A DNA stretch of 64,000 nucleotides from Macrostomum lignano (taxonomy: Eukaryota): the NCBI GenBank assembly GCA_002269645.1, contig NIVC01001810.1, positions 62,001 to 126,000 on the forward strand. Reading direction: 5' to 3'. Below, piece after piece: positions 23,401 through 64,000 of this stretch (position 1 is its first letter; the number at the start of each line of letters is the position of its first letter). The position numbers and the translations under genes are program-made. The notes beneath the pieces are model-generated. The model made no database searches. It was not told the DNA's origin and was given only the letters and a program-made list of their open reading frames with translations.

Positions 23401-23768
23401 CATATTTCACAACATTTGAAAGCTTTTGGGTTTATATATTTTGTAAGGAAATTCTCAATTTAGCAGTATAGTAAGTCAAAACAAGTTTTAGTAATAGAAA
23501 ACATTTTTAGTATATTGGATTGATTGAATTTAATTGTATCAAGATATATATACCTGATCAGCTTATATTTGAATATGTTTTTTTATTTGTTTTATTACAG
23601 AAACTAACAAAGTGCTTTATTAAATATGACTTGTTTTAGTAGAAAATATTTTAGTGTACTAATAAATAATGGAATCCCAATCTTCCTGCCTCAGCTGTGA
23701 ATCGGCTGTTGCAAAAATTATTCTTAACCACAAAGCCAACTGCTAAAGCAGAAATCAAGCAAGTTCCA

Positions 23769-26700
23769 ATGTCTGAATCAGCCGATCTCGAGGCTGGAGT
23801 GGCCAACCTGGCCGTGGACTGTCCAGAGCAGGCGGACCGAGTTGGCAAGTGGCTGGCCCGCAATGACCGGTTCTGCCGCCGCTCTCCAACTGCCAGCAGC
23901 GCCGCCCGCGAGGAGGCCGCCTCTGACGACAGCGGCCGGCCATCCAGCGTGGACACTGACGCCGCGGCCAGCCCGCGCCAGCAGCAGCAGAAGCAGCAGC
24001 AGCAAAAGCAACAGTCAGCAATTGCTGCCAAGAACCCCGGCGAACCGTCCTCATTAGCAACTGTTGCTAACCAGGACCAACGTGCTAGATTGATTGTCCG
24101 CGGCGCCTCGCCCGTGCCTGGCGACGAGAACGATATTGTGCACCAGTTCCTCATCCCCAACAAGCTGGGCGGCTCCATGGTCGGCACCCGCGGCCGCAAC
24201 ATCAACTACATCCGGGCCAAGTCGGGTGCCTCCGTCTGGATCAGCCGGAACTTCTTTGACAAGAAGACGCAGGTTGTCAATGTGCGAGGTGAGCTGGAGA
24301 TACAAACGGGTAGCCCTTCAGTTTGCACTCTTCAATTTGCACTCTTCAATTTGCACTCTTCAATTTGCACTCTTCAATTTTCGCTCTTCAGTTTGCACTC
24401 TTCAATTTGCACTCTTCAATTTTCGCTCTTCAATTTGCACTCTTCAATTTGCACTCTTCAATTTGCACTCTTCAATTTTCGCTCTTCAATTTGCACTCTT
24501 CAATTTGCACTCTTCAATTTTCGCTCTTCAATTTGCACTCTTCAATTTGCACTCTTCAGTCTGCACCTTCAACTGGCACCGAAAATGCAATAAAGGCCTC
24601 AAAACGGCACCAAGATACACATACTTATGGCCTTAAGAACATGACTAGTTGCGCACTTTTACAAAGACAAACCCCTGCCTCATCGCCTCGAGATCTGACT
24701 AACTAATTAAAATGTATTTTGCTTCCCTTTTGCTCTGTGAGATTAGCCTTTTTGTCTGATCTGAAAGCAAGAAGCTTCAGCGCGGTGAATCCTTCAGTTT
24801 CTAAATTGAACTGGGCTTCAGCTCCTGTCCTGAGCTGCTTCTAAAAGCTGAGCTCTGCCTAATCATTGCCCCGCAGGCCCCGTGAACTGCGTGAAGATCG
24901 CGCTGCAGGTGATCAAGAAGCGCTTTCCCGAGCTGGACGTGAAGCCGATCAACACCGCCGTGCCCATCCAGCGCAACCCGGCGCTGCAGCCCACCATGTG
25001 CCAGGTACGTAGGTTGTTTCAGTTGCAGTCTGCTGCATCTGTTTGACCTCAAGTGACCTCAGTTAACCTCCGTGTCTTTGGGAATGCCCGATTGAAAATA
25101 AATATTCATGTCATGCTAGTCATGAGGATGCAGAATTTCACTGCCTTCCTGTTCCTCATCTGTCTCTTGGCCGTCTCCCCCAGCATCCACTCCATGCCTG
25201 TCGCCTATTGTGTTGCCCAAATTCCCATTGTTCATATTCTCTTTTTCTGAATCGGCTCTCTGCATCACTGAGTCTTGGCACCCGCCTGATAATAGTCCCA
25301 TTGTAATTTTCTATACATATCGGTAGATGAGATAATAGTCCCATTGTAATTTTCTATACATATCGGTAGATGAGATAATAGTCCCATTGTAATTTTCTAT
25401 ACATATCGGTAGATGAGATAATAGTCCCATTGTCATTTTCTATACATATCGGTAGATGAGATAATAGTCCCATTGTAACTTTCTATACATATCGGTAGAT
25501 GAGATAATAGTCCCATTGTAATTTTCTATACATATCGGTAGATAAGATAATAGTCCCATTGTAATTTTCTATACATATCGGTAGATAAGATAATAGTCCC
25601 ATTGTCATTTTCTATACATATCGGTAGATGAGATAATAGTCCCATTGTCATTTTCTATACATATCGGTAGATGAGATAATAGTCCCATTGTCATTTTCTA
25701 TACATATCGGTAGATGAGATAATAGTCCCATTGTCATTTTCTATACATATCGATAGCTAAATCAGAAGCGCCTGTCTAGTCACGAGAGCCGGCCACCCCT
25801 CCCCACTTCTGGAAAATTCCACGCCGCAGAGAAACTTTTTGGGCGCCGGGCGGTGACCTCTTCTTTCTTCTCTGACCTAAAAATAGCATTTCTAGCAAAA
25901 CAGCTCGCACTTCTCTCAAGTAAATTTTGAAAAAAATTAAGTTGGAAACTTCAAGGTGAGCCCCTCACAGCCCCGCTATCCTATCTCGCATTGTTTTTCT
26001 CTCCGTTGCTTTCTTATATGCTCGAGACTTGCTGAAAAAAACCCTGCTTTGACTTGGCTGGTTCGGCGTCATGTGACTCTGGGGTGCCTTGTGTTGTTTT
26101 TTTGTACTGCCAGAGCGCAGCCCCGCCCCCCCCCCCCCTGCCCGTTCATTAAGAGTTTAGACTCGCCCGACTGTTAAAGTAGCCAGAGTTTATCTCATTT
26201 GCTGGTCCTCAGGAATAGCTGATAATCTAGAATAGCTGACAGTCTAGAATAGCTGACAGTCTGGAATAGCTGACAGTCTAGAATAGCTGACAGTCTGGAA
26301 TAGCTGACAGTCTGGAATAGCTGACAGTCTGGAATAGCTGACAGTCTGGAATAGCTGACTGTCTGAATGCTGACTGTCTGGAATAGCTGACAGTCCGAAA
26401 TAGCTGACAGTCTAGAATAGCTGACAGTCTAGAATAGCTGACAGTCTAGAATAGCTGACAGTCCGAAATAGCTGACTGTCTAGAATAGCTGACTGTCTGG
26501 AATAGCTGACTGTCTGGAATAGCTGACAGTCTAGAATAGCTGACAGTCTGGAATAGCTGACAGTCTAGAATAGCTGACAGTCTAGAATAGCTGACAGTCC
26601 GAAATAGCTGACTGTCTAGAATAGCTGACTGTCTGGAATAGCTGACTGTCTGGAATAGCTGACAGTCTAGAATAGCTGACAGTCTGGAATAGCTGACAGT

Positions 26701-43200: not shown

Positions 43201-46200
43201 GAGTGAGTGCCATTTCAGCTGAGTGAGTGCCATTTGATCTGAGTGAGTGCCATTTCAACTGAGTGAGTGCCATTTCAACTGAGTGAGTGCCATTTCAGCT
43301 GAGTGAGTGCCATTTGATCTGAGTGAGTGCCATTTCAACTGAGTGAGTGCCATTTCGACTGAGTGAGTGCCATTTCAACTGAGTGAGTGCCATTTGATCT
43401 GAGTGAGTGCCATTTGATCTGAGTGAGTGCCATTTCAACTGAGTGAGTGCCATTTGATCTGAGTGAGTGCCATTTCAACTGAGTGAGTGCCATTTGATTC
43501 GAGTGAGTGCCATTTCAACTGAGTGAGTGCCATTTCAGCTGAGTGAGTGCCATTTGATCTGAGTGAGTGCCATTTCAACTGAGTGAGTGCCATTTCAACT
43601 GAGTGAGTGCCATTTCAACTGAGTGAGTGCCATTTCAACTGAGTGAGTGCCATTTCAACTGAGTGAGTGCCATTTCAACTGAGTGAGTGCCATTTCAACT
43701 GAGTGAGTGCCATTTCAACTGAGTGAGTGCCATTTCAGCTGAGTGAGTGCCATTCCAAGCTCACCTCCGGAGCTCTCGGTGGCCGCCTTGAGCGACTGGA
43801 CGGCGGTCATAAGGCTACTCAGGGTGCTCGTGACACTCTCGAACTGGAGCAGGAAGGTGGTGAAGCATTTGAAGGTTGAGAGTACAGTGAATCTGGGGAT
43901 GTAATTCGAATACCCGGTGACGCACTTGGCTCTCCAGTCTGGCGATTCGGTCGGCAACTTCCGGTGACATTTTGGCCACAACCATGTGCGGCTGCTGCTG
44001 CTGGGGCGGCGGCAGCGGCGGCGGCGGCAGCGCGGCCTGGGAGCCGGCCGAGGCAGCGGCTGGCAGCTGGTCCACTTTCTTGGAAAGGTTGGACAGCCTG
44101 CGGGGGCGGTGATGGAGATGGCTGCAGCTGCCCTGGGGTTGTTCGAATTACTGTTGACCTCAACTGACGTCATGCATGTAAGGCCCCGATAATCTATACT
44201 CATACTCATTCGATACTCATTCACCTCAATGAGTCACCGATAATCTCTATTGACCTCAATTGGTCGTCGATGACCTTCATTGACCTCAATGGGTCGCCGA
44301 TGACCTTCATTGACCTCAATGAGTCACCGATGACCTTCATTGACCTCAATGAGTCACCGATGATCCCTATTGACCTTAATGAGTCACCGATGACCTTTAT
44401 TGACCTCAATGAGTCACCGATGATCTCTATTGACCTCAGTAAGTCATCGATGACGTGCATTGACCTCGAGGTGTCACCGTTAACCTCAAATTGATTTCAC
44501 CTCTTAACCTCTTGGCTCAGAAAAATGGCTTCTAATTCATCGATGACCTATTTTGTGAATCCTATAGCTTTGAGATACCCGATGGACCTCAGTTAAATAA
44601 GCAATCATGATGAGCAAGTGCTCAGATGCATGAGCACTGCCACCCGCCAGCAACTCACTGGTCATTGCACTTCCTCAGGATGTTTTTATCGGCATCGCTA
44701 TTGGCCTTCTTCATCCTGCGCGTAATCTCCAGGATATGCAGGCACTCCCAATTCTTCAGCTGCCGTTCGACTGACTCGGAGAATCGGTGCTCTGCAATGT
44801 TTTATTGGCCGATATGTATCGAAATTATACTTTACACGATTGTTTGTTGATGCTAATCATACTACTAAGTAGATTGTAGAGATTCTCGCAATTAAAAAAA
44901 CTTCAAGAGGTATTTTCAAGAACAGAAAATAAAAAGACAAGCCGATATGTATCGAAAACAGAATAATGAATTGAAAATTGCTTATGGATGGGATTATTAG
45001 TAGTTACTCGGCTGAAGAAACTGTCGGAACATCTGACCAAGGACCACGAATGCCAAAGCTAAGAAATTAATTTATTTCACTAAATTTATCAATTCCATAA
45101 CTTTGACGTCTTACGCCTTTTTTTCTGTTAATTCCCCAATAAAGATTGTGGCAGCTAAGCGGAATCGAACCCGGGACCTTCAGAGCGAGGCTTGGGGACT
45201 CACGCAGCGGGCTCCTGGTGTTGTAGCCGCAGCCGCAGCGGTGATTGGAGCAGCGCCAGCAGCGCTTGCACAGCAGGCGGATGAGCTGGTAGGCGTGGGA
45301 GAAGATGATGAGGGGCGGCGGCAGGCAGGGCTTCTCCGAGTACTCCCGCACCAGGCTGATCCGCATGAACCGCCAGGTATCGTTTGTGTGGCCCTTCAGC
45401 GTGTTGAAGGTGTGCGCGAAGGTGGCGATCAGCAGGTTGAGCATGAGCACGTTGGCCAGGATGATGTAGGCGGCCAGCAGGATGGGGGAGATCCAAGTGC
45501 CCTCCGGCGTGGCGCACCGCGGCATGGTGTTGTTGGCCCACTCATCCTCATCGAAGGTGCACGGCAGCTCGCCCTGCATGATGTCCAGCTGGAACTCGCC
45601 GAAGATCTGGTAGAAGGCGCGCTGGTACACGTCCTTGATGAGGCCGGCTTCTTTGAAGGAGTTGGGGAACAGGATGGCCTGCTGGGCGATGCCGTAGCCC
45701 GTCACCAGCACCAGGAACACCACCCAGAAGTGGAACAGGTCCCGGATCTGCGGGATGACGTGGCGTTAATTAAATCATTTTGGGATCAGAGTGAATCATT
45801 TTGGGATCAGAGTGAATCATTTAAGGATCAGAGGGAATCATTTGCGACATTAGAGTGAATCAATTAGGGATCAGTGTGAATCATTTTAGGATCAGAGTGA
45901 ATCATTTGTGGGATCAGAGTGAATCATTTTGGGGTCAGAGTGAATCATTTGTGGGATCAGAGTGAATCATTTTGGGATCAGAGTGAATCATTTGTGGGAT
46001 CAGAGTGAATCATTTGCAATCCGAGGATTAGCCGGGCGCTCACCATCCGGCCGATCATGACCAGGTACGGTCCGAGCGCGGAGTCCAGCGAGTAGAAGTG
46101 CAGCAGCCGGAAGAAGAACAGCACCAGGTCGATGGCGTAGAACACGCGGCCTGCGGCGAAGCCGTCCTCTGTGGGCTGCACGCGGCACACAATGCCCAGC

Positions 46201-49200
46201 AGGAACAGCACCAGGATGACCATGTCCATGATGTTCCACGGGTCCGTGGCGTACTCGATCAGCTTCTCGCGGAACGTGTGCCGGTTCACGAATAGCGCCT
46301 GGGGATTCGGGGAGGTGGTAGTTTGGGGAGATTATGGGATTTGGAGATTGTGGGATTTGGCAGCTCGAGGAGAGGAGAGGATTTTGGAGATTATGGGATT
46401 TGGAGATTGTGGGATTTGGGGAGTTCGATGAGATTATGGGATTTTGGGAGTTGAGGAGATTGTGGGATTTTTGGAGATTGTGGGATTTGGCAGCTCGAGG
46501 AGAGGATAGGATTTTGGAGATTGTGGCATTGCAAGAGATTGTAGGGTTTGAGAGGATTTGAGACTTACAATAAGAATTTTCAGAGCACTCACCTGGCGGA
46601 TCTCCTCCACAATGAGGGTGCCAATCCAGATCATGAGCATGATCTCGGAGGGGTGGATCACCGGGTTGAACTCGGTGAGGATCACATAGGTGTACAGCAG
46701 CAGGAACATCAGGTAGAACAGGTAGTTGTACATGAAGATCACCCGCGGCGACTGGTGGAATTCCAGCAGCTTGCGGCAGCAGCTGAGGGTGGAGCTGCCG
46801 CTCAGGAACCGGATGTTCTCCTTGGCCAGGCCGGTCTCCAGCTTCCGCCATCGGCGCGACAGGTCCCCGCCAGCCTCGGCCCGCCGCAGGAACAGCTCCT
46901 CGATGTCCTGGTCGGCGTCCATCTGCTGCAGCTGGGCGAGGCGCCGCTGCCGGGTCTCGGAGCTGTACACCGTGCCGAGCAGGGCGCCGATGAGGTACAG
47001 CGGGAAGCAGGCGATGGTGAGCACCACGTACACGAACAGCTTCAGCGTCGCGTTCTGGCTGGAGATGCCGCCGTTCCAGACGTCGTTGAGCAGCCGCTGC
47101 GGGGCGTCCTGGCTGACGAAGTCGAGGCTGTGCGAGTAGCTCGCCAGCTGCAGCGGCGTGGAGCTGCCGAAGAACTCGGAGACGCGGATGAGCAGCAGCT
47201 CGGAGCGGATCGGGTCGCTCTTGGACGTCTCGTTGCTGAGCTGGATGGCCAGCTGCTCGAACTCCCTGCCGGAGTTTTCGACAGACAGGGGGAGGGGGTG
47301 ATGGAGCAGTAGGAGGCGGATGCTGAGCAGCTCAGTGAGAGGCGAGGCGTCTGAGTCTCGGGCCAGATGCACCTGAGCTCGATTCCGTGCGCGGCCCGCA
47401 TTCAACTCAATCGGTGTGAGGCTTGAGGGGGGAGAGGGAAAGGGAGAGAGGAGATGGAAAGAGGGAGAGAGAGGGAGAGTGAGAGAGAGAAGGAGAGGGA
47501 GAGAGGAAGAGAGGGAGAGTGAGAGAGAGAAGGAGAGGGAGAGAGGGAGAGAGGGAGAGTGAGAGAGAGAGGGAGAGGGAGAGAGGGAGAGAGGGAGAGA
47601 GAGGGAGAGAGAGAGGGGGGAGAGAGAGGGAGAGAGAGAGGGAGAGAGAGGGAGAGAGAGAGGGAGAGGGAGAGAGGGGGAGAGGGAGAGAGAGGGAGAG
47701 GGAGAGAGGGAGAGAGGGAGAGAGAGGGAGAGGGAGAGAGGGAGAGAGAGGGAGAGGGAGAGAGGGAGAGAGAGAGGGAGAGGGAGAGAGAGAGAGGGAG
47801 AGGGAGAGAGGGAGAGAGGGAGAGGGAGAGAGGGAGAGAGAGAGGGAGAGGGAGAGAGAGGGAGAGAGGGAGAGAGGGAGAGGGAGAGAGGGAGAGGGAG
47901 AGAGGGAGAGGGAGAGGGAGAGAGGGAGAGGGAGAGGGAGAGAGGGAGAGGGAGAGAGGGAGAGGGAGAGAGGGAGAGAGAGAGGGAGAGGGAGAGAGAG
48001 GGAGAGAGGGAGAGAGGGAGAGGGAGAGAGGGAGAGAGAGAGATCGGGAGAGGGAGAGAGGGAGAGAGGGGCAACACAACAGAAGCTGAATCTGCCCGAT
48101 CAGCTTTTTTAGTGAAATAAATTGTCTGCGTATCCTTTTTTAAGCGTCAATCAGGTAAGAGAAGATAATGATCAAGGTAGGCTGCGGGGAGATGAGAGAA
48201 GGATGTGAAGGAAGGCACTCACCTGGCCGCATCTCGGATCTCCTGCTGTTCACGCATGTCGTCCTCGATGTTGTCTGCGATTTCGCTCCACACCCGATGG
48301 GCGAAGAGGGCGGCGGTGAGCGGCTCGGACACCTCCTCCCAGAGCAGGCGGGCCATGGACAGGCGGCTGGTGAGCACACTCCACACGAACAGGTCGTTGT
48401 AGGGATCGTCAAAGTGCGGCAGGGTGGCCTCCTGCTCGTCCTCCCCTGCAGCAGTAAAATAAATAATCTTGCTGAAAATATTCTAGTAGCCTACTTTCAG
48501 TAGATGCAGTGTGCGTAAATAGATTTATATAGACAGATTTATAGGAGATTGAAAGCTACATGCATGCGGATAACGGATAATATAGCCAGAAACGGAGGTA
48601 TAAGACAGCTGAGCGCATATAAATCAAGGACGCAGGCCTAAAGAATCTGATTGGTCAATATTAGTCACGTGATTCGACAGATCGGGGTAGAAAATGTGGG
48701 GTTGCTTGCACGATTTTGTAAAAAAGCAACCTCTCATAGCCCACCAACCAATCAAATCAGTTCGTCTAATATTCAAGTGGCACTTGGTCAATACTAAATT
48801 TCTAGTGTCTTAGTGGTCGTTGCTTAGTCCGGAGTCTATAGCAACTAATATAAATGTTGCTCAAAGAACATTGCGTGTTATGCATTGTGCATTAATAATA
48901 GCAGATGACTATGAGTAGAGTACAGAGGGATTTAAGCGTGGTAACTCACAACAAATCCGTTTGAACTCTGAAAAAACAGCGGTGAAGGTTAGAGAGTGAG
49001 TGTGATTGAGTTACACCTGTCAAGTCAAGCAATTCAATTAGTCGCTTAATTGGAGATTTTTAACTTTTGATTGAAATGAGTTTGTTAATAATTAATTCGA
49101 ATACGGCAGGTTTTTACTAACGAAAAACGGCAAAATGTATTTTAATCGATCAGTCGTAGATTTTAGCATAAAATAAACCTGTGAATTTAGAATAATCTAC

Positions 49201-52200
49201 CACTAGATTATAACAAAAATCAAACAGTAACTTTTAAAAAATAATCAGCCAGTAAATTATAACAAGAAATAAACTAGCGGAATTCGTCAACGTCCATCCA
49301 GTAGATTATAACAAAATCCATTCCATAGATTTAAATAATTTCGGCGGATTTTAAAATTAACACTGCCCCGTCAGTTTTAACAAAAAAGCCACGCAAACCG
49401 GAAAAAACACGTATTTTACCGCCGGTTTTAGGAAAAAATGCCTACAGTTATTGAAAAAGGTTAGCAGATGGCTCAAAAACATTAAATTGAAATTAGAAAA
49501 AACTGTCTAGAAATAAATTTCCAAATAAAATTATTGTTTCAAATATCCATACTCACTCTGAACATAGATGGGCAGGCGGGCGTTCTTCAGTATGGGCAGC
49601 TTCTCCTTGGTGTCCTGGTCGCCCACTGGGCCCGGCTCGTCCGGCCGGATGATCACGTCCGGGCACAGGCCGATGTAGCGCGGGTCGCTCAGGTAGGGCG
49701 ACTGGAAGAACTGGCCGGCCACCGACTCCAGCACCTCGCCGACGTCTTCTAGCGAGAAATAGCGCTTGCCCTGGGGTTTGATGGCGTCAGGGTGTGGGAG
49801 TTCAATGCATGGGTGACAGGGTGTGGGGAATTCGATGCTTATAAAGTGTCATTATGTGGGGAATTCGATGCTTATAAAGTGTCAGGGTGTGGGGAATTCG
49901 ATGCTTATAAAGTGTCAGGGTGTGGGGAATTCGATGCTTATAAAGTGTCAGGGTGTGGAGAATTTGATGTTCTAAGGTGTCAGAATGTCTCACCTTGTCC
50001 CTCATCTTCATGAACACCTTCCAGATGTACTCCTTGGCTCTGTTGTCCGGGTAGATGGTGTTGTAGAGGAACACCAGCTTCTCAATGCTGAGAAACTCCT
50101 TCATCATGAAGTTGTTGTCCAGGAAGATCTTGACGAACTTCGGCCTATCCAGCACCAAGGCCTTGTACATGAAGGGCTCCAGGGAATGGGTCTGCGGCGG
50201 AGGGGATGAATGGTAGGTTCGAGTTCAACTGTGCCTGTTCTGAAACTTTTTATTTTGACATGAGAACAGAGAATTTCCGGATTGACTCACCGACCACTCG
50301 AATTCGCCGTCGAACACGATCTTCCTGGCGATGTCGTCCCGGTTCAGCGTCAGGGCGAGCTTCAGCTGGTCCTCCTTCTTGTGATTGGCTGCGCAGTTGC
50401 GGAGGCAAATGGGGGTGGGGTTAGTTTGCAATGTACATTAGCCTGACTACTCTAGGGCCAAAGCAATGTACATTAGCCTGACTACTCTAGGGAAAAAGCA
50501 ATGTACATTTAACTACGAATCCTATGTAATCTCGTAATTATTATTATAGGGCCAAAGCAATGTACATCTAACTCATTTTTCTAGGGCCAAAGCAATGTAT
50601 ATCCAACTAATTATTCTAAGGCCAAAGAAATGCACATCCAACTAATTATTCTAGGGCCAAAGAAATGCACATCCAACTAATTATTCTAGGGCCAAAGCAA
50701 TGTACATCCAACTAATTATTCTAGGGCCAAAGAAATGCACATCCAACTAATTATTCTAGGGCCAAAGAAAAGTACATCCAACTAATTATTCTAGGGCCAA
50801 AGAAAAGTACATTAGCTTAGTTTCTCTACTGCCAAGTGACAGAATCAGGGTGTCCAATTCTCTCGAGTGCACGAGAACTCAAAAAGCTTGCAAATAAGCG
50901 CAGTTCACCTTTCATAATGGCCTGCAGGATGGCCACATCCAAGTTGCACGAGAAATCGTCGCTCTCCAGCTCGTACACGCTGACCAGGTGGTCGTACTTG
51001 AGAATGGTCTCAATCCAGTCCATGAGCTCCGGCACGCGCTTGTCGCCGAACTCGCCGCGGAGTCGGCTGGTCAGCTGGCGCACCTGGTCCTCGGTGAGCT
51101 GCCGCTCCACGCTGCGGATTAAAACAAAATTGCCAATGGATTTGAATTCGAGCGTAGAGGAATGCAAGGGCTGAGATGAGAAAGTATTGTATAGGATTTC
51201 ATTTGGATACTTTTAAAAAATTATTAGATCATGGAGCAACGTGGTTTCACGAGTTTACCGAATCATTTGGGACGTAGCCAAAATCTGGTGCCCCCTTCAC
51301 AGCAGCTGAGGCGCCCCTTGATGCTGGCGGCCTGACAATGGTGCTCCTGGATGGTACTGCCCCTAGGATGGCTGCCCTCCACAATGGCGCCCCCACGATG
51401 GCACCCCCAGAATGGCGCCTCCCCAGAATGGCGCCTCCCCAGAATGGCGCCTCCCCAGAATGGCGCCTCCCCAGAATGGCGCCTCCCCAGAATGGCGCCT
51501 CCCCAGAATGGTGCCTCCCCAGAATGGCGCCTCCCCAGAATGGCGCCTCCCCAGAATGGCGCCTCCCCAGAATGGCGCCCCTCAGAATGGCGCCTCCCCA
51601 GAATGGTGCCTCCCCAGAATGGCGCCCCTCAGAATGGCGCCCCACAGAATGGCGCCTCCCCAGAATGGTGCCTCCCCAGAATGGTGCCCAACCCCAGAAT
51701 GGCTCCTCCCTAGAATGGCACCTCCCCAGAATGGCGCCCCCAGAATGGCGCCCCCTCAGAATGGCGCCCCCCAGAATGGCGCCCCACAGAATGGCACCCC
51801 CAGAATGATGCCCAACCCCAGAATGGTGCCCAACCCCAGAATGGCTCCTCCCTAGAATGGCGCCTCCCTAGAATGGCGCCCCCAGAATGGCGCCCCCAGA
51901 ATGGCGCCCCACGATGGCACCATGATGATTTACTGGCCTCATCGATGGCGGCCACGCAGCACTTTTGCAGTCCCCATTCTCCCAACAATCCATGCAAGCC
52001 TTGCTGAGCATCTCAGAGGTGCCGAAATGACAAGCACTGAGTCCGTGATTTGAGTCTCGTGAGAATTAGCATTGTCAGCTTGCAGGAGAGGGCACCCTTG
52101 CAGATGCACCCGTATACAGGTACATAAGCAGCGGCTCTGACTTTCCCATTGTCAGGCAGTGTGCACTCACCGCACTACCTCGTTGCCATCGGAGTCCTCC

Positions 52201-54460
52201 ACCACCGCCTTGCTCGGCCGGCTGTGCGCGTAGGCGTAGGCCAGGATGTCGGCGGCTCCCTGGCTGCCGTGGACCAGCAGTACTGGGGTGCCCTGCTCCA
52301 CGGCGCACTTCACCGTCTGCACCGTGCCGGGGCCGCCCTGCACCACCAGGCAGACGGTGGGCACCTGGCCGGTGTCTTTGGCCGAGTCAGCCAAAGCGTG
52401 CTCGATTCGAGCTCGGGCGGGGATCTCGGCGCCGAACCGAAGCTGGGTGCCGTTGTCAACCAGCAGGAAGTGGGTGTGGTTCACGTCCAGATTGCAGGTG
52501 TGCGGCAGCAGGCGGTAGCTGTGCCTGTAGGCCACCGGCTGCCCGCCGTGGCTGTCGCACAGCAGCTGATCTCTGCGGAGTTGGTTGAGGATGAGGCGGT
52601 GCTTGTTGGGGATTCTGGGTAGCGGCTGCAATGTCTGACCAGCATGTATGACCATCTCATCATTACCATGACAAGCATGTATGACCATTCAATCATTGCT
52701 GTGACCAGCAGGCATGACCCCCTCATCATTGCCATGACTAGCATGTATGACCATCCAATCATTGCTGTGACCAGCAGGCATGACCCCCTCATCATTGCCA
52801 TGACCAGCATGCATGACCATCTCATCATTGCTATGACCAGCATATATGACCGTCCAATCATTGCTGCGACCAGCAGGCATGACCCCCTCATCATAGCCAT
52901 GACTAGCATGCATGACCATCTCATCATTGCCATGACCAGCATGCATGACCATCTCATCATTGCTATGACCAGCATGTATGACATTCCAATCATTGCTGTG
53001 ACCAGCAGGCATGACCCCCTCATCATAGCCATGACTAGCATGCCTGACCATCTCATCATAGCCATGACCAGCATGCATGACCATCTCATCATTGCCATGA
53101 CCAGCATGTATGACCATCCAATCATTGCTGTGACCAGCAGGCATGACCATCTCATCATTGCCATGACCAGCATGTATGACCATCCAATCATTGCTGTGAC
53201 CAGCAGGCATGACCCCCTCATCATAGCCATGACTAGCATGCATGACCCATCATCATCCTATCATAGCATCATCCTATCATAGCATCATCCTATCATCATC
53301 CTTTCATTTCTCTTGAACCAGCGTGCCCCCATCTCATCTCACCTGTCAGCCACGGTGCCCCAGGGCGCGATGCCCAGGCAGACCACTGGCCGCCCGACCC
53401 CGGATCCGTAGTCCTTGACCGCCTTGCCCGCCAGCTTCATGACGCCCTCGGAGGTGCCGCCGGTGATAATCCAGGCTCCCGTAGTCTTGGCGGCGTCCAT
53501 CAGGCCTTTTTTGAAGGCCTTCTTCAGCCGTTTGTTCAGCTTGAGCTTCTTGGCGCCGCCAGTGACTGAGATAATCATGTTGGGAGGCTGGAGTCCCCAA
53601 ATCTCCATCAGAAGTGACTTCACCGTCTCTGGATCGGTCGCGGCGTCCATACGGACGTACTGGGGGCAACAGTGAGAAATGATATGGTTGCAATGCACTC
53701 GCAATAGCACAGAATTTCATGAAGCCAGCCAAGCTTCCTCCTCGCCTCACCTTAGAAATCTTGCCGCCAGGGAGCAGCATCTCTCCGCAAGCGTTGGTGG
53801 GGCCGCTGTCCGCGGTGCAGGTGTCCTCGCGCCACTTCTCGCCAACTCCGCCTGACCTGACATGGTCGCCGCCAGCCGGGTAGCCACAGGCGCAGACCGC
53901 GTCATCGCTGATGGGGAGCATGTTTTGTTTATAACGATTTCAGTTGGCATCAGAGAATGCTAATAGCGTTACTAAATAAAAAGACCAACCTTGAGTCGTC
54001 ATCCGGTCCGTAGACGAACTTGACGCAGGATCGCTTCTTAAAGTTCCTCCGGATCCATTCTAACTCGGGATCGGCATCTGCCTGTCTGCCCCTGACACCA
54101 GACTCCATAGGAATGTCCTCTACCTGGCCGTGCTCGTTAGAACGAAGGTCCGCGCCGCTGTCCTGCACCTTGTTGCTCCCAGCAGGTGGGCGCCTAGATA
54201 TCTAATACAGCCAAGAATGAAGCGAAAAAATTTATAAAAAGTAAAGTAAAAATATGAGTAAGAGTAAAATTTCCAAATTTTCCAGCTTTTGAGAAATATT
54301 TTCTGACTCATTTATTAATCACAATCACAAAATCCCCAGTATTATTAATTATTGATTACACTAGCTCAACCTCAATGCATCTTTTGAAAAATGCTAAATC
54401 TAAGCAACAACACTAAAAAGCAGAAAAGACACGTACCCCAAATTTAGACTTTCCGGTCAT
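40233..54460 (-). CDS. TRPM2: TRPM2-like cation channel with C-terminal NUDT9-homology domain; exons (minus) 54460-54437(tentative), 54201-53990, 53907-53751, 53659-53343, 52572-52171, 51111-50909, 50388-50291, 50191-49994, 49770-49557, 48445-48223, 47265-46593, 46298-46044, 45747-45204, 44791-44659, 44097-43926, 43843-43765, 43002-42714, 41484-40951 (contains 1-nt frameshift), 40352-40233
   Basis: MHR: [52 protein letters not shown]; TM: [40 protein letters not shown] box WRFMR, LPPP; NUDT9-H: [33 protein letters not shown]. Splice phases match throughout. Confidence 0.92.
40398..40790. repeat. 29-bp minisatellite (CCTGCTGCTGGCCTGCCGCTTATCTACAG)
   Basis: About 13 copies in the last TRPM intron. 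Confidence 0.93.
41620..42713. repeat. 17-19-bp minisatellite (CCCCAGACTCACCCAGC); minus strand is the repeated splice donor GCTGG|GTGAGTCTGGGG
   Basis: About 60 copies starting at the real donor (42713). Confidence 0.96.
43020..43756. repeat. 20-bp minisatellite (GAGTGAGTGCCATTTCAACT)
   Basis: About 37 copies filling a TRPM intron. Confidence 0.97.
44215..44480. repeat. 30-bp repeat (GAGTCACCGATGACCTTCATTGACCTCAAT)
   Basis: About 8 copies. Confidence 0.9.
45770..46018. repeat. ~21-22-bp repeat (GGGATCAGAGTGAATCATTT)
   Basis: About 11 copies filling a TRPM intron. Confidence 0.9.
47425..48072. repeat. GA-rich polypurine low-complexity tract
   Basis: Almost exclusively G/A for ~640 bp. Confidence 0.97.
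49790..49985. repeat. 33-bp repeat (GGGTGTGGGGAATTCGATGCTTATAAAGTGTCA)
   Basis: About 5-6 copies filling a TRPM intron. Confidence 0.9.
50425..50820. repeat. 35-bp repeat (CTAGGGCCAAAGCAATGTACATCCAACTAATTATT)
   Basis: About 10 copies. Confidence 0.9.
51380..51920. repeat. ~16-bp minisatellite (ATGGCGCCTCCCCAGA)
   Basis: About 33 copies. Confidence 0.94.
52640..53250. repeat. 33/36-bp minisatellite (CATGACCATCTCATCATTGCCATGACCAGCATG-type)
   Basis: Tandem copies filling a TRPM intron. Confidence 0.93.
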
Positions 54461-57990: not shown

Positions 57991-58125
57991 ATATTTTGTT
58001 ATTTTTTACTTTACTATTCATTAGGCCTCATGCCTAATGAATCCATTAGTCATCCAATAGTCTTGTAGCAATATGGGGCTGCTTGGTCATTTCTTTAGCC
58101 ATGACACTGTGGGCATGCGGATTAC

Positions 58126-58225
58126 AGCCATTGTTTGTGATGGGGCTGCAGCCATTGTTTGTGATGGGGCTGCAGCCATTGTTTGTGATGGGGCTGCAGC
58201 CATTGTTTGTGATGGGGCTGCAGCT
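58126..58225. repeat. 24-bp repeat (CAGCCATTGTTTGTGATGGGGCTG) x4
   Basis: Direct. Confidence 0.9.
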
Positions 58226-58267: not shown

Positions 58268-61200
58268 ATGAAGCAGCCACAGCAGCAGCAGCAGCAGTCA
58301 CCGCCGCTGGTTCCACCATGCCGCAGGTGCGCCAACCCGTTGCCAGACACAGACAACATCGACGCTGCCGACTCGGCTGTCTTCGACTCCGATGAGCCCC
58401 GGCTGCGCCGTCTGGCACCACCGCCCGACCGCCTGCTGCCCGGCGAGCGCCTGCTGCATGTTGGCGCCTCCTCTGATGGCGGCGCCGTGGCGCTCACCAA
58501 CTACCGACTGCTGCTGATCGGCGCCTGCGGCCGCCTCTCCGCCTGCCTGCCCGCCGGCATCCTGGAGCGGCCTGCCGTCATCGCCGACGCCCCCACCGCC
58601 TACCTGCTGAATGGCGGAGCCGCCGAGCCTGCCGACTCCGCCGCTCCGACCGAGGCTCAGCCCGATGACGAACTTGCCGACTCGAGAGGTTGGTTGCGGG
58701 TTCGAATTCCAGACTCTGAGTAGGGATTTGAGATACTCGACATCCCAGATTCTAGTTCGGATTTGAGAAATTCTACATGTCAGATTCACTCAGATTCTAA
58801 GTTGGGATTTGGGACAGTTGATTGACAGCCCTGATTCTGAACAGGGGTTTGGGAAATTTTATTTCCAAGATTGAGTTTTATGATAACATGATGGTACTTT
58901 TAAATTACGAACTCGACATCACACATCCGACATCCCAAATCTGACATACCAAATCCGACATTTCCAATCCGACATCCCAATCCGACATACCAAAATTCGA
59001 CATCCCAATCCGAAATCCCAAATCCGAAATCCCAATCCGACATCACACATCAGACATCCAAATCCGACATCCAAAATCCGACATCCCAATCCGACATCCA
59101 AAATCCGACATCCCAATCCGACATCCAAAATCCGAAATTCGAAATCCGACATTGCTGATCCGATATCCCAATTCGACATCCCAATCCGACATCCCAAAAT
59201 CCGACATCCCGATCCGACATCCCAATCCGAAATCCCAAATCCGAAATCCCAATCCGACATCACACATCAGACATCCCAATCCGACATCCAAAATCCGACA
59301 TCCAAAATCCGACATCCCAATCCGGCATCCAAAATCCGACATCCAAAATCCGAAATTGCTGATCCGACATCCAAAATTAAATCCAACATCTCCGCCCCCC
59401 GCAGCCGACGCCGCAAAGCCCGGCCGTCGCGAGGCCTCCCGCTGAAACGACAATTTATACGGGTTTTTCCCATATTATCGTTTCCTTCTGCCAACAGTTC
59501 AGGAAGACAACGAACAATGGACCTGAATGGTAACTTTCTCTGTGTGATCTCTAGAGTCACATTCTCAAACTTCAGGCGAGGATCTTTCCTCTTCAATCAG
59601 TATATTTTATAAGCTAGCACACTGTACGCGAGCAACGAGGAATAGGAGCAGTAGGGGGAAAGAGTGGGATTTCGAGGCCCAATAGGCAGTGTCGGTCAGA
59701 GGTTGTGCATGCATCACGCGAGGGTCGCATGGCTGGGCTTCTTGCTCGCCGATCATCAGGACTATTTTTAGGCATGCAGATCTTGTGCATCTGGGGAGTT
59801 GCTGCCAAGGCTGGATGCTTGTTCACGCATCACGCGCGTGTCGGCTGATTTCTCCTATCCTCTTGCTAACGGCGCCTTCGTTTCACTTCAGTCGCTCTTT
59901 TTTCAGGGAAGCGAGGCCCTCCGAGCTCTGTTGAAAATAAGCTTGGAGCAATGATGACATGGCGTACAGTTGTGCATTTGCTTGCGATACGCAGTCCCAC
60001 TTGGTAACTTGCAGTTGAGTTGATGTTGTTGAAACACGAAACTTGGTCAAGGGGCAAAGTGAACTTGTGACAACAGTGGATGAATTGTACCAGCATATCC
60101 TCTTGACTATTTAATCAGATCTGAGAGGGGGATTGACGTGAACTCGGAAACTCGACAAATTGAATGGGCTTTTCGATGCCCTAAACAGTGACGCAAATAG
60201 GACTGGACACGGAGACTCGACAAATTGAAACAGCGTCTGGTAGACAGTCAGATCGGGATGCTGGCTGAAGGTACATTGCAGTTAAATAGGACGTCGAAAA
60301 ATACCGTCTTGACCAAATTGATTGTGTAGATCTCTCAACGAAAGTTTCTTCTTGGAAGGGTAAACTGCGTCGCTTCTTGATCTTCGTCCATTGGTCTTGT
60401 TTAGTTCGAAGTTTTCCTTTACTGAAGGCAGGAAAGTCTCAGTTCTCGATTTACTCGGATGGCTGTGGAAGACATGCAGCAGAGCGATAACTGCATGGTG
60501 TCTGAGACTTCTGTCTAGCGGTGACTCACGCGGTCAGTGGAACCAATTGAAACGAAAAATTTATATGGGTTTTTCCCATATTATCGTTTCCTTCTGCCAA
60601 CAGTTCAGGAAGACAACGAACAATGGACTCGATGGTAACTTTCTCTGTGTGATCTCTAGAGTCACATTCTCAAACTTCAGGCGAGGATCTTTCCTCTTCA
60701 ATCAGTATATTTTATAAGCTAGCACACTGTACGCGAGCAACGAGGAATAGGAGCAGTAGGGGGAAAGAGTGGGATTTCGAGGCCCAATAGGCAGTGTCGG
60801 TCAGAGGTTGTGCATGCATCACGCGAGGGTCGCATGGCTGGGCTTCTTGCTCGCCGATCATCAGGACTATTTTTAGGCATGCAGATCTTGTGCATCTGGG
60901 GAGTTGCTGCCAAGGCTGGATGCTTGTTCACGCATCACGCGCGTGTCGGCTGATTTCTCCTATCCTCTTGCTAACGGCGCCTTCGTTTCACTTCACCGCC
61001 TCCTGCTGGCCAGCCGGACCGGCCGCGTCCCGCTCCGCCTCGGCTTCCCCCGGCCTGGCGACGCGGCCATCTGGGCTGAGCGGCTGGACCCGGCCGGCCC
61101 GCTGGCCTGCAGCTCGGACAGGGCCGGCGTTGGCGCCGCGCTCCGCTGTCAGGCCGATGATCGCCGGTTCGACTTGTACGCTGCCGAGCTGAGCAGGGAG

Positions 61201-61956
61201 GAGTTCCTGGTTGGTGCCGACTGACTGCGGCTGGCTTGGGGCCGGAGGCAGAGAGGGGAAGCACCACGCAATCTCTTGGTTTGAGGAGGTTGTCATGCGA
61301 TTTAAACCTTGTGAGGGCCGACTCCGAACACAGCTATATAGAGCTGCTGTACACCCTGAGTGAGCGTGTGCATGGGTGCACATACATGCGCAACCCCCTG
61401 ATTTACATCGACCGTGCAACTGACCAAAATTCGTAATTTTGGGTAAACAGCAGGAGTAACTATAACTGTACTAGTAAGGTTAAATGCCTCGTCATCCAAT
61501 GAGTACGTTTCTCTTATTTTTGGGTGGACCCGCGAATATTTATCTGAGGTAGAGAGAAGCGAGGAGGCCACGCACTCCAAAGCTCAAAAAGAGACAATAA
61601 CATGACCTTCAACTGTCCCGCCGGGCTCGCAGGCTGAGCAAGTTCGCCTCGGCCTGATCAGCCCTGGCAGCTCCGAACCCGGCCAGTGGCGCCAGGCGGA
61701 GTCGCCTGCCGGCCTGTGTCCGAGCTACCCCAGGCTGCACATCCTGCCCGCCGGCCTGTCCGACGCTGAGCTCGCGCTGTCCGCCAAGTACCGTGCCAAC
61801 GGCCGCTTCCCCAGCGTGGTCTGGCGCTGCTCCACCACCGGCGCCGTGCTGGCGAGGTCTGCACAGCCGCTGGTCGGGCTCGCCGGCCTGCTTGGCTGGC
61901 GCTGCGAGGCTGACGAGAAACTCGTGAGATTGCTGACGCCCAGGCCGGAGAGCAAG
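58268..61956 (+). CDS. Myotubularin-related phosphatase (MTMR3/4-like), 5' part; exons 58268-58688, 59405-59442 + 61000-61209 (split by LTR insertion), 61633-61956; continues beyond window; disrupted, possibly pseudogenised
   Basis: PH-GRAM: LLPGERLLHVG..GAVALTNYRL, LGFPRP..WAERL; phosphatase N-terminus: WR..LCPSYP..LP..SD..L..AKYRANGRFPSVVWR..GAVLARSAQPLVG..GWRCEADEKL. Phases match once the insertion is removed. Confidence 0.85.
58915..59390. repeat. Degenerate ATCCGACATCCCA-type short-unit repeat
   Basis: Intronic tandem copies ending at the acceptor (59404). Confidence 0.9.
59443..60995 (-). mobile_element. Non-autonomous LTR retrotransposon (TRIM-like): LTRs 59443-59890 and 60548-60995, internal region 657 bp, TSD CCGC
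   Basis: Two 448-bp direct repeats bounded by TG...CA; CCGC at 59439-59442 and 60996-60999; minus-strand PBS TGGTTCCACTGACCG 2 nt after the LTR (resembles the complement of the tRNA-Glu 3' end with one bulge); PPT GAAAAAAGAGCGAC next to the other LTR; no long ORF. Confidence 0.93.
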
Positions 61957-61967
61957 GTGAGGCTGGT

Positions 61968-64000
61968 GGCACTGAGATAAGCACTGAGATGGGTACTGAG
62001 ATGGGTACTGAGATGGGTACTGAGATAAGCACTGAGATGGGCACTGAGATAAGCACTGAGATGGGCACTGAGATAAGCACTGAGATGGGTACTGAGATAA
62101 GCACTGAGATAAGCACTAAGATAGGCACTGAGATAAGCACTGAGATGGGCACTGAGATAAGCACTGAGATGGGCACTGAGATAAGCACTGAGATAAGCAC
62201 TGAGATGGGCACTGAGATAAGCACTGAGATAAGCACTGAGATGGGTACTGAGATAAGCATTGAGATGGGCACTGAGATAAGCACTGAGATGGGTACCGAG
62301 ATAAGCACTGAGATGGGTACTGAGATAAGCACTGAGATAAGCACTAAGATAGGCACTGAGATAAGCACTGAGATAAGCACTGAGATGGGTACTGAGATAA
62401 GCACTGAGATAAGCACTGAGATAAGCATTGAGATGGGTACTGAGATAAGCACTGAGATGGGCACTGAGATAAGCACTGAGATGGGCACTGAGATAAGCAC
62501 TGAGATAAGCACTGAGATGGGCACTGAGATAAGCACTGAGATGGGTACTGAGATAAGCATTGAGATGGGCACTGAGATAAGCACTGAGATGGGTACTGAG
62601 AAAAGCACTGAGATGGGTACCGAGATAAGCACTGAGATGGGTACTGAGATAAGCACTGAGATGGGTACTGAGATAAGCACTGAGATGGGTACTGAGATAA
62701 GCACTGAGATGGGTACTGAGATAAGCACTGAGATAAGCACTGAGAAGGGTACCGAGATAAGCACTGAGATGGGTACTCAGATAAGCACTGAGATGGGTAC
62801 TGAGATAAGCACTGAGATGAGCACTGAGATAAGCACTGATATAAGCACTGAGATAAGCACTGAGATGGGTACTGAGATAAGCACTGAGATAAGCACTGAG
62901 ATAAGCATTGAGATGGGTACTGAGATAAGCACTGAGATGGGCACTGAGATAAGCACTGAGATGGGCACTGAGATAAGCACTGAGATGAGCACTGAGATAA
63001 GCACTGAGATAAGCACTGAGATGGGCACTGAGATAAGCACTGAGATGGGTACTGAGATAAGCATTGAGATGGGCACTGAGATAAGCACTGAGATAAGCAC
63101 TGAGATGGGTACTGAGATAAGCACTGAGATAAGCACTGAGATGGGTACTGAGATAAGCACTGAGAATGGTACTGAGATAAGCACTGAGAAGGGTACCGAG
63201 ATAAGCACTGAGATGGGTACTCAGATAAGCACTGAGATGGGTACTGAGATAAGCACTGAGATGGGTACTGAGATAAGCACTGAGATGGGCACTGAGATAA
63301 GCACTGAGATGGGTACTGAGATAAGCACTGAGATGAGCACTGAGATAAGCACTGAGATGAGCACTGAGATAAGCACTGAGATGGGTACTGAGATAAGCAC
63401 TGAGATAAGCATTGAGATGGGCACTGAGATAAGCACTGATATAAGCACTGAGATAAGCACTGAGATGGGTACTGAGATAAGCATTGAGATGGGTACTGAG
63501 ATAAGCACTGAGATGGGCACTGAGATAAGCATTGAGATAAGCACTGAGATGGGTACTGAGATAAGCACTGAGATGGGTACTGAGATAAGCACTGAGATGG
63601 GTACTGAGATAAGCACTGAGATGGGTACTGAGATAAGCACTGAGATGGGCACTGAGATAAGCACTGATATAAGCACTGAGATAAGCACTGAGATAAGCAC
63701 TGAGATGGGTACTGAGATAAGCATTGAGATGGGTACTGAGATAAGCACTGAGATGGGCACTGAGATAAGCATTGAGATGGGCATTGGGATGGGTACTGAG
63801 AAAAGCACGGAGATAAGCATTGAGATGGGCACGGAGATAAGCATTGAGATGGGCACTGAGATAAGCACTGAGATAAGCACTGAGATAAGCATTGAGATGG
63901 GCACTGAGATAAGCACTGAGATAAGCATTGAGATGGGCACTGAGATAAGCACTGAGATGAAGTGGGCACTGAGATGAGATGGGCACTGAGATGAAGAGGT
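61968..64000. repeat. 12-bp satellite with two unit types (CTGAGATAAGCA / CTGAGATGGGTA), runs off window end
   Basis: About 170 units starting ~12 nt after the donor at 61957. Confidence 0.97.

What the first reader, a model, noticed from the sequence alone, without database searches (positions are those of the whole stretch)
59405..61209. Complete mini LTR element inserted inside a myotubularin coding exon
The exon starts at CAG|CC 59405 (A-DAAKPGRREASR) and is cut by TGAAACG..., which puts an immediate in-frame TGA after CGC. Removing 59443-60999 (element plus one CCGC copy) restores GCC TCC CGC CTC CTG CTG = EASRLLLASRTGRVPLRLGFPRP in frame and in phase with both flanking exons. The element has all cis signals (TG/CA ends, PBS, PPT, 4-bp TSD) but only 657 bp of non-coding interior, so it needs an autonomous partner. 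The largely identical LTRs and intact TSD indicate a young insertion that probably inactivates this gene copy. It is a possible undescribed TRIM-like family primed by tRNA-Glu.
Basis: partly seen in the sequence, partly recalled or inferred. Interest (0 to 1): 0.8.

Follow-up and report, generated by a model that had tools for sequence, protein, structure and literature searches.

The report
Small non-coding LTR retrotransposon splitting an exon
A 1.55-kb LTR retrotransposon with no genes of its own sits, in antisense orientation, inside a coding exon of one copy of a myotubularin-type phosphatase gene of the flatworm Macrostomum lignano; other copies of the gene lack it, so this is a real, recent but ordinary transposon insertion.

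Summary
There are two 448-bp direct repeats, 59443-59890 and 60548-60995. They start TG and end CA, differ at 6 positions, enclose 657 bp and are flanked by a 4-bp duplication, CCGC. Removing the element plus one CCGC restores an open exon that is in phase with both neighbouring exons. The spliced product is a myotubularin-related phosphatase (Pfam 1.2e-19) and matches Macrostomum lignano proteins almost exactly. Two M. lignano gene models (A0A1I8F317 and P0003) read straight across the empty site. A third (A0A1I8F4C9) starts inside the LTR and is 100% identical to the window over 78 residues. No canonical intron could produce the empty junction, so occupied and empty copies both exist in the species.

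The element runs on the minus strand, antisense to the gene. Its primer binding site (TGGTTCCACTGACC, 2 nt from the LTR) and its polypurine tract (GAAAAAAGAG, 4 nt from the other LTR) fit only that orientation. The interior has no coding capacity, so the element needs Gag, reverse transcriptase and integrase supplied in trans.

Three things could not be tested here: family size, the autonomous partner, and tRNA-Glu priming. No M. lignano genome or tRNA set was reachable.

It is a new member of a known kind (a TRIM-like non-autonomous LTR element) and of modest interest.

The parts
59439..59442 (.). Target-site duplication, left copy (CCGC). It is also the last 4 bases of the upstream half of the exon.
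   Evidence: The empty-site models read ...GCC TCC CGC CTC..., which contains a single CCGC.
59443..59890 (-). 3' LTR in the element's own orientation. 448 bp, TG...CA ends, with TATAAAA at 59611-59605.
59895..59904 (-). Polypurine tract GAAAAAAGAG, 4 nt (CGAC) upstream of the 3' LTR.
   Evidence: Read directly from the sequence.
59891..60547 (-). Non-coding interior, 657 bp. It contains a 26-nt direct repeat (60139-60164 and 60204-60229, 88% identical).
60532..60545 (-). Primer binding site TGGTTCCACTGACC. The plus strand reads GGTCAGTGGAACCA, which is the sense of a tRNA 3' end. The site is separated from the 5' LTR by 2 nt (AT, 60546-60547).
60548..60995 (-). 5' LTR in the element's own orientation. 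448 bp, with TATAAAA at 60716-60710.
60996..60999 (.). Target-site duplication, right copy (CCGC).
58268..58688 (+). Upstream coding exon of the host myotubularin-related gene. It carries the motif LLPGERLL...LTNYRLLL and ends in phase 1 at G|GTTGGT. The start at ATG 58268 is tentative.
   Evidence: P0003 residues 2-59 are 100% identical to the window here.
59405..59442 (+). First 38 nt of the interrupted exon (acceptor ...cgcag|CC). It encodes (A)DAAKPGRREASR and is followed by the element's TGA.
61000..61209 (+). Second part of the interrupted exon. It encodes LLLASRTGRVPLRLGF...SREEFL and ends at the donor |GTTGGT.
   Evidence: It is 100% identical to P0001 and P0002.
61633..61957 (+). Next exon, which begins the myotubularin phosphatase domain (CPSYPRLHILPA...RSAQPLVG...).
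   Evidence: Pfam PF06602, E = 1.2e-19. Matches MTMR1 and MTMR2 structures at E = 1e-13.

Best explanation
It is a non-autonomous LTR retrotransposon. It is TRIM-like in the broad sense: 1,553 bp in total, with 448-bp LTRs and a 657-bp non-coding interior.

Shown:
- It integrated into a coding exon of one copy of a myotubularin-related phosphatase gene of Macrostomum lignano, in antisense orientation.
- It has LTRs, TG/CA ends, a TSD, a PBS-like site and a PPT, and lacks coding capacity.
- An empty site exists in other gene copies.
- It places an in-frame stop directly after the insertion point.

Inferred mechanism:
- Transcription starts in the LTR at 60548-60995 (TATA at 60716-60710) and runs towards lower coordinates.
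- The RNA is packaged by the Gag of a related autonomous element.
- A host tRNA whose 3' end reads ...GGTCAGTGGAACCA, probably tRNA-Glu, primes minus-strand synthesis at the PBS.
- The polypurine tract primes the plus strand.
- The partner's integrase joins the cDNA at a 4-bp staggered cut, which gives the CCGC duplication.

Inferred consequence: this gene copy is truncated within its N-terminal PH-GRAM region. The loss is tolerated because the DV1 genome carries near-identical uninterrupted copies.
For: - LTR geometry, identity and TSD.
- Orientation: only the minus strand has TGG 2 nt after an LTR, continuing into a tRNA-3'-end complement, together with a purine run next to the other LTR.
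- No coding capacity.
- The R-U5-PBS leader region (my tentative assignment from the TATA position) folds more stably than shuffled sequence, z = -3.3, with 0 of 100 shuffles as good.
- Host gene identity: Pfam Myotub-related, E = 1.2e-19; MTMR1/MTMR2 structures.
- Organism and empty site: P0002 (A0A1I8F317) reads GRREASRLLLASRTGRVP across the site. P0003 reads the same DNA with a 1-nt frameshift. P0001 (A0A1I8F4C9) begins GAFVSLH|RLLLAS, i.e. inside the LTR, and is 100% identical to window 60976-61209.
- None of the five possible excision registers has GT/GC..AG ends, so the empty junction cannot be a splicing product of the occupied locus.
- The DV1 assembly is known to be redundant, with 180 Mb in blocks at least 95% identical, and 21% of the genome is LTR retrotransposon (PMC5730564).
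Against: - Only one copy was seen, so propagation as a family is not shown.
- The LTRs are not identical, and all six differences lie within 85 bp at one end. A simple clock of post-insertion mutation does not predict that pattern.
- No canonical AATAAA signal lies in the LTR.
- The tRNA was not identified against the host's own tRNA genes.
- ML2 and Mlig_3_7 were both built from the same PacBio reads. The occupied junction is therefore confirmed by a second assembler, not by independent reads.
Confidence: 0.9

Rival explanations
1. It is a one-off, internally deleted copy of an autonomous Ty3/Mdg4-type element. Gag-pol would have been lost by template switching during reverse transcription or by a later deletion. 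On this reading it is not a member of a self-sustaining non-autonomous family.
For: - Only one copy was seen.
- No LTR-derived peptides appear in other M. lignano models.
- A 657-bp interior could be just a 5' leader joined to a 3' untranslated region.
- M. lignano has hundreds of autonomous families (409 initial families; PMC12801592).
Against: - The interior holds no trace of gag or pol in the sense frames, although the LTRs are young.
- The search power was low, because no genome was available.
- The element is non-autonomous by definition either way.
Confidence: 0.3
2. It is an assembly artefact, for example a chimeric read or a mis-join, and the insertion does not exist in the animal.
For: M. 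lignano assemblies are error-prone. Only 64% of Mlig_3_7 bases and 32% of ML2 bases were judged error-free by REAPR (PMC5730564).
Against: - A perfect 4-bp TSD and exact TG/CA ends lie at a site that closes to an open reading frame.
- The same LTR-exon junction appears in gene model P0001. Its underlying DNA differs from the window by indels in the next exon, so it comes from another assembly or another locus.
Confidence: 0.04
3. It is a 1,105-bp tandem duplication (1.4 units) in a genome rich in tandem repeats, not a retroelement.
For: The window is full of tandem arrays (49 TRF rows).
Against: - The empty site lacks the whole 1,553 bp, not just one unit.
- TG/CA ends, a tRNA-like PBS, a PPT and a TSD are all at the expected positions.
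Confidence: 0.01
4. The insertion is harmless to the gene, because cryptic splicing removes it and an essentially intact protein is made.
For: In-frame, stop-free combinations exist, but only with GC donors. One example is GCC|GCAAAG at 59412 paired with acceptor TTTTTAG| at 60876.
Against: - No GT donor lies upstream of the stop.
- Every combination either adds LTR-derived residues or deletes residues conserved in the paralogue P0004, such as WAERLDP.
- Skipping the 248-nt exon shifts the frame.
Confidence: 0.1

Closest known systems
ta-TRIM of taeniid tapeworms (Koziol et al. 2015, PMC4558846)
   Same: - A flatworm non-autonomous LTR element.
- TG...CA LTRs.
- A non-coding interior of about 600 bp (590 there, 657 here).
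- The PBS lies a few bases after the 5' LTR and the PPT a few bases before the 3' LTR.
- The TSD is 4-5 bp.
- It must be mobilised in trans.
   Different: - The LTRs here are 448 bp, against about 198 bp.
- The PBS is of tRNA-Glu type, not the 9-nt tRNA-Leu site.
- The host is a free-living macrostomid.
- ta-TRIMs were reported as restricted to Taeniidae. Sequence similarity was not tested here, because no ta-TRIM sequence was available.
Plant TRIMs and LARDs, in the classification quoted in PMC4558846
   Same: LTRs, a PBS and a PPT, with no coding capacity. By the size rule (<4 kb = TRIM) this element is a TRIM.
   Different: This element is 1.55 kb with 448-bp LTRs, so it falls between a classic TRIM and a small LARD.
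Autonomous M. lignano LTR retrotransposons (Mag, CsRN1, Gmr1/Osvaldo, Copia and Bel/Pao families; Ustyantsev et al. 2025, PMC12801592)
   Same: Same host and the same general LTR architecture. These families are the likely source of the proteins needed in trans.
   Different: Those families were mined by starting from a reverse transcriptase domain, which this element lacks. No canonical three-unit heat-shock element is present in this LTR. Which family is the partner is unknown.
Myotubularin-related phosphatases MTMR1/MTMR2 (the host gene)
   Same: The start of the phosphatase domain aligns (PF06602; PDB 5c16 and 1zsq). The uninterrupted copy P0002 carries the active-site motif VHCSDGWDRT.
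   Different: Only the N-terminal third of the gene lies in the window. The assignment of the interrupted exon to the PH-GRAM region rests on position and motifs, not on a significant alignment.

Membership tests
LTR retrotransposon (structural definition) | Two long direct terminal repeats that begin TG and end CA | tested here: met
   The LTRs are 448 bp each and 98.7% identical, starting TG and ending CA.
LTR retrotransposon (structural definition) | A short target-site duplication and a matching empty site | tested here: met
   CCGC flanks both ends. P0002 and P0003 read across a site with a single CCGC. No canonical intron could mimic this junction.
LTR retrotransposon (structural definition) | A primer binding site complementary to the 3' end of a host tRNA, next to the 5' LTR | tested here: inconclusive
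   TGGTTCCACTGACC lies 2 nt after the LTR on the minus strand. It resembles the complement of tRNA-Glu 3' ends that I recalled from memory: an exact 3'-anchored run of 7 nt, and the best local score among 9 tRNAs. No M. lignano tRNA gene was available; the window contains none.
LTR retrotransposon (structural definition) | A polypurine tract next to the 3' LTR | tested here: met
   GAAAAAAGAG lies 4 nt upstream of the 3' LTR.
TRIM / non-autonomous LTR element | No gag or pol coding capacity | tested here: met
   The longest interior ORF is 76 aa. The six frames give no credible Pfam match, only one hit at E = 0.21. No homologue was found for the three sense frames.
TRIM / non-autonomous LTR element | Miniature size | tested here: inconclusive
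   At 1,553 bp the element meets the <4 kb rule quoted in PMC4558846. It exceeds the typical 0.5-1 kb, and its 448-bp LTRs exceed the 100-250 bp I recall as typical.
TRIM / non-autonomous LTR element | Multiple dispersed copies mobilised in trans by a partner that shares LTR ends, PBS and TSD length | not testable with these tools
   No M. lignano genome was reachable. All of these returned nothing: the window, the JGI metagenome scan, exact ORF look-ups, contig look-ups and an LTR six-frame protein search.
Myotubularin family (host gene) | Myotubularin-like phosphatase domain | tested here: met
   PF06602 scores 70.8 bits against a cut-off of 25, E = 1.2e-19, covering profile positions 26-123. 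MTMR1 and MTMR2 structures match at E about 1e-13.
Myotubularin family (host gene) | An N-terminal PH-GRAM domain that contains the interrupted exon | tested here: inconclusive
   There is no significant Pfam or PDB alignment upstream of the phosphatase domain. The assignment rests on position, about 90-100 residues before the phosphatase start, and on the LLPGE...LTNYRL motif.

The most novel reading that the evidence does not exclude
The element is one copy of an undescribed TRIM-like non-autonomous LTR family that was recently, or is still, active in Macrostomum lignano and is primed by tRNA-Glu. Published screens would have missed such a family: one used LTRharvest with a minimum TSD of 5 and discarded unclassified elements, and the other started from reverse transcriptase domains. 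It would be the first such family in a free-living flatworm. Because the species can be made transgenic, the family could serve to pair a TRIM with its autonomous partner experimentally.
Probability: 0.4. Interest if true: 0.35.

Novelty: new member of a known kind. Interest (0 to 1): 0.25.

Why it matters
- It documents an exon-disrupting retrotransposon insertion that differs between near-identical gene copies of a regeneration model. This implies recent LTR-element mobility in the sequenced DV1 line.
- It shows that one annotated 'protein' (A0A1I8F4C9) is a truncated model that starts in an LTR.
- Non-coding LTR elements like this one are invisible to the published M. lignano screens. The 2017 LTRharvest run required a TSD of at least 5 bp and dropped unclassified elements. 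The 2025 screen started from reverse transcriptase domains. The 21% LTR fraction and the family catalogue are therefore likely incomplete.
- Beyond that, it is an ordinary transposon insertion.

Tried and rejected
- Other copies or solo LTRs in the window: none (blastn, word size 9; 36-mer probe).
- tRNA genes in the window, to test the PBS: none.
- Rfam on 59300-61100 at E <= 5: two chance-level hits only, no tRNA-like or other RNA family.
- Pfam on the six frames of the interior: only one chance-level hit, E = 0.21.
- Protein search with a six-frame composite of the LTR and a three-sense-frame composite of the interior: no hits. This means no detectable gag or pol relic, and no other M. lignano gene model that contains this LTR.
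- Exact-sequence look-ups of 18 window ORFs in and around the element: none is in the collection.
- Contig look-ups for P0001 and P0002: not on record. The empty-site DNA itself could therefore not be fetched.
- JGI metagenome scan with a 26-mer from the LTR: 0 matches.
- Literature string searches for the PBS and LTR-end sequences: three unrelated papers for the PBS strings and none for the LTR ends.
- No searchable paper combines Macrostomum with non-autonomous transposable elements.
- Supplementary consensus sequences of PMC12801592 are not held.
- Plus-strand orientation was rejected. No TGG follows the left LTR, and GGTCAGTGGAACCAAT is not a purine tract.
- A heat-shock element in the LTR, as in some M. 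lignano families: only a two-unit TTCnnGAA, and it lies downstream of the TATA box.
- The tandem-duplication and splicing-artefact explanations of the empty site were rejected.
- The PH-GRAM domain could not be confirmed by sequence alignment to solved MTMR structures.
Full report
**Observation**

The region 59443-60995 consists of two 448-bp direct repeats, 59443-59890 and 60548-60995, around a 657-bp interior.
- A global alignment of the repeats gives 4 substitutions and 2 single-base indels, about 98.7% identity.
- Each repeat starts TG and ends CA.
- The tetranucleotide CCGC lies directly before the first repeat (59439-59442) and directly after the second (60996-60999).
- A 36-nt probe from the repeat matches exactly twice in the 64-kb window, with none expected by chance.
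- A sensitive blastn of the whole element against the window finds nothing beyond the element itself.

**Orientation and cis signals**

Written on the minus strand, the element reads in this order:
- the 5' LTR, corresponding to window 60995 down to 60548;
- a 2-nt spacer, AT;
- TGGTTCCACTGACCGCG, where TGG is the complement of a tRNA CCA end and the plus strand reads GGTCAGTGGAACCA, which is the sense of a tRNA 3' end;
- the interior;
- GAAAAAAGAG, then CGAC;
- the 3' LTR.

On the plus strand there is no TGG after the left LTR and no purine run before the right LTR. The element is therefore antisense to the host gene.

A TATAAAA box sits at position 280 of each LTR. No canonical AATAAA signal and no three-unit heat-shock element are present in the LTR.

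I tentatively call the stretch downstream of the TATA box the R-U5-PBS leader. It folds more stably than shuffled sequence (z = -3.3; 0 of 100 shuffles as good). This fits a structured retroelement leader but does not prove one.

**Coding capacity**
- The longest ORF in the interior is 76 aa.
- The six reading frames give no credible Pfam match; the only hit has E = 0.21.
- A composite of the three sense frames finds no homologue among 5.8 billion proteins.
- Rfam gives only two chance-level hits, at E above 1.

The element cannot encode Gag, reverse transcriptase or integrase. It must use proteins supplied in trans.

**Host gene and organism**

The plus-strand exons are ...58688, 59405-59442 joined to 61000-61209, and 61633-61957. 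Spliced together they give an open frame.
- The product matches the Pfam myotubularin phosphatase domain at E = 1.2e-19.
- It also matches solved MTMR1 and MTMR2 structures.
- The best database relatives are all Macrostomum lignano proteins.
- Where the reading frames agree, the match is 100%. The window therefore comes from this flatworm or a nearly identical line.
- The window's heavy load of intronic minisatellites agrees with the published description of that genome: 15% simple and tandem repeats and 21% LTR retrotransposons (PMC5730564).

The interrupted exon lies about 90-100 residues upstream of the start of the phosphatase domain. It follows the LLPGE...LTNYRLLL motif, so it most likely encodes part of the PH-GRAM domain. 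No significant alignment supports that assignment.

**Empty and occupied sites**

Three UniProt gene models cover this locus or its duplicates.
- P0002 (A0A1I8F317) reads DAAKSRGRREASRLLLASRTGRVPLRLGF..., straight across the insertion point.
- P0003 reads EASRSCWPAGPAAS, which is the same DNA with one base missing.
- P0001 (A0A1I8F4C9) has no start methionine and begins GAFVSLHRLLLASRTG.... Its first residues are translated from the end of the LTR, and it is 100% identical to window 60976-61209.
- P0001 differs from the window by frameshifts in the next exon. It therefore derives from another assembly or another locus, not from this very sequence.

I checked all five registers in which the element plus one TSD copy could be removed. 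None has GT/GC...AG ends, so the empty junction in P0002 and P0003 cannot result from predicted or real splicing of the occupied locus.

The species therefore holds both occupied and empty versions of near-identical gene copies. This fits the known redundancy of the DV1 genome, which has extra large chromosomes and 180 Mb in blocks at least 95% identical. M. lignano is also described as a hidden allotetraploid (PMC12801592).

**Effect on the gene (inferred)**
- The element's first three plus-strand bases, TGA, are in frame, so translation stops after ...EASR.
- No GT donor lies upstream of that stop.
- The only stop-free, in-frame cryptic combinations use GC donors. They would either add LTR-derived residues or delete residues conserved in the paralogue P0004.
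- Skipping the 248-nt exon shifts the frame.
- This copy is thus most likely a null or truncated allele. Intact copies that carry the active-site motif VHCSDGWDRT, seen in P0002, probably buffer the loss.

**What it is**

It is a non-autonomous LTR retrotransposon.
- By the size rule quoted in PMC4558846 (TRIM <4 kb, LARD >4 kb) it is a TRIM. It is larger than typical TRIMs.
- Its closest described analogue in flatworms is the ta-TRIM of taeniid tapeworms. That element has LTRs of about 198 bp, an interior of about 590 bp, a PBS a few bases from the LTR, a PPT three bases from the LTR, and a TSD of 4-5 bp.
- The PBS differs. ta-TRIM uses tRNA-Leu. Here the site ends ...GGAACCA in tRNA sense, the ending I recall for tRNA-Glu.
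- Among nine tRNA 3' ends that I wrote from memory, the three tRNA-Glu versions gave the longest 3'-anchored exact run (7 nt) and the best local scores. This is a lead, not a test.

**Novelty**
- The 2017 genome paper screened with LTRharvest using -mintsd 5 and removed unclassified elements.
- The 2025 LTR-retrotransposon catalogue started from reverse transcriptase domains and required RT, RNase H and integrase.
- An element with a 4-bp TSD and no coding sequence would escape both screens.
- No searchable paper links Macrostomum with non-autonomous elements.
- The 2017 paper does mention a '2-kb long LTR retrotransposon' at a transgene integration site, so short LTR elements have been seen in the repeat annotation.

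I could not reach any M. lignano genome sequence. Copy number, solo LTRs and the autonomous partner therefore remain untested.

**Unexplained detail**

All six LTR differences lie in the 85 bp nearest 59443 and 60548. In the element's orientation this is the end of the LTR next to the PBS, which is the U5 side. The other 363 bp are identical.
- If the differences count as four events, the chance that all fall within any 85-bp window is about 0.03.
- Possible causes are gene conversion with another copy, read-through of minus-strand synthesis into the U5 of a second packaged RNA followed by mismatch repair, or polishing errors from reads of other copies.
- None of these could be tested here.

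**Verdict**

The claims about a family and about tRNA-Glu are plausible but untested. The finding is a new member of a known kind, of modest interest.

Noticed in passing
window 59443-59527 versus 60548-60632: All six differences between the two LTRs cluster in the 85 bp at the U5 (PBS-proximal) end. The remaining 363 bp are identical. This is not the pattern expected from uniform mutation after insertion. Gene conversion, recombinant reverse transcription or polishing error are possible causes.
   Followed up: partly
window 58914-59377, 61969-63958 and many other sites: Nearly every intron carries a long minisatellite array. TRF reports 49 rows scoring at least 200, for example a 14/27-nt array directly upstream of the interrupted exon and a 24-nt array of 83 copies downstream. 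This is typical of M. lignano.
   Followed up: partly
window about 45067-54168, minus strand: A multi-exon TRPM-type cation channel gene. ORFs at 52167-53710 match the 'SLOG in TRPM' domain at E = 8e-36 and 5e-27. ORFs at 45067-46289 match the ion-transport domain.
   Followed up: partly
window 6520-8016 (+), 13588-14178 (-), 23697-24593 (+): Three other host genes: a C2H2 zinc-finger protein in a single 498-aa ORF, a thioredoxin-fold exon (PDI-like is my guess), and an exon encoding a KH domain.
   Followed up: partly
UniProt A0A1I8F4C9 (P0001) and P0003, compared with window 61633-61957: The public M. lignano gene models for this gene carry frameshifts relative to the window. P0001 also starts inside the LTR. 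These database 'proteins' are partly artefacts of indel errors and of the transposon insertion.
   Followed up: yes
window 60139-60164 and 60204-60229; 59703-59727 and 59819-59843 (repeated in the other LTR): There are short internal direct repeats. One is a 26-nt pair (88% identical) in the interior. The other is a 25-nt pair (84% identical) 116 bp apart in the part of each LTR upstream of its TATA box (the presumed U3). They may be packaging or enhancer elements.
   Followed up: no
window 58125-58224: A perfect 24-nt repeat of 4.2 copies lies just upstream of the first coding exon and is in frame with it (it would encode AAAIVCDG four times). It is unclear whether it is coding, 5' leader or intron.
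   Followed up: no
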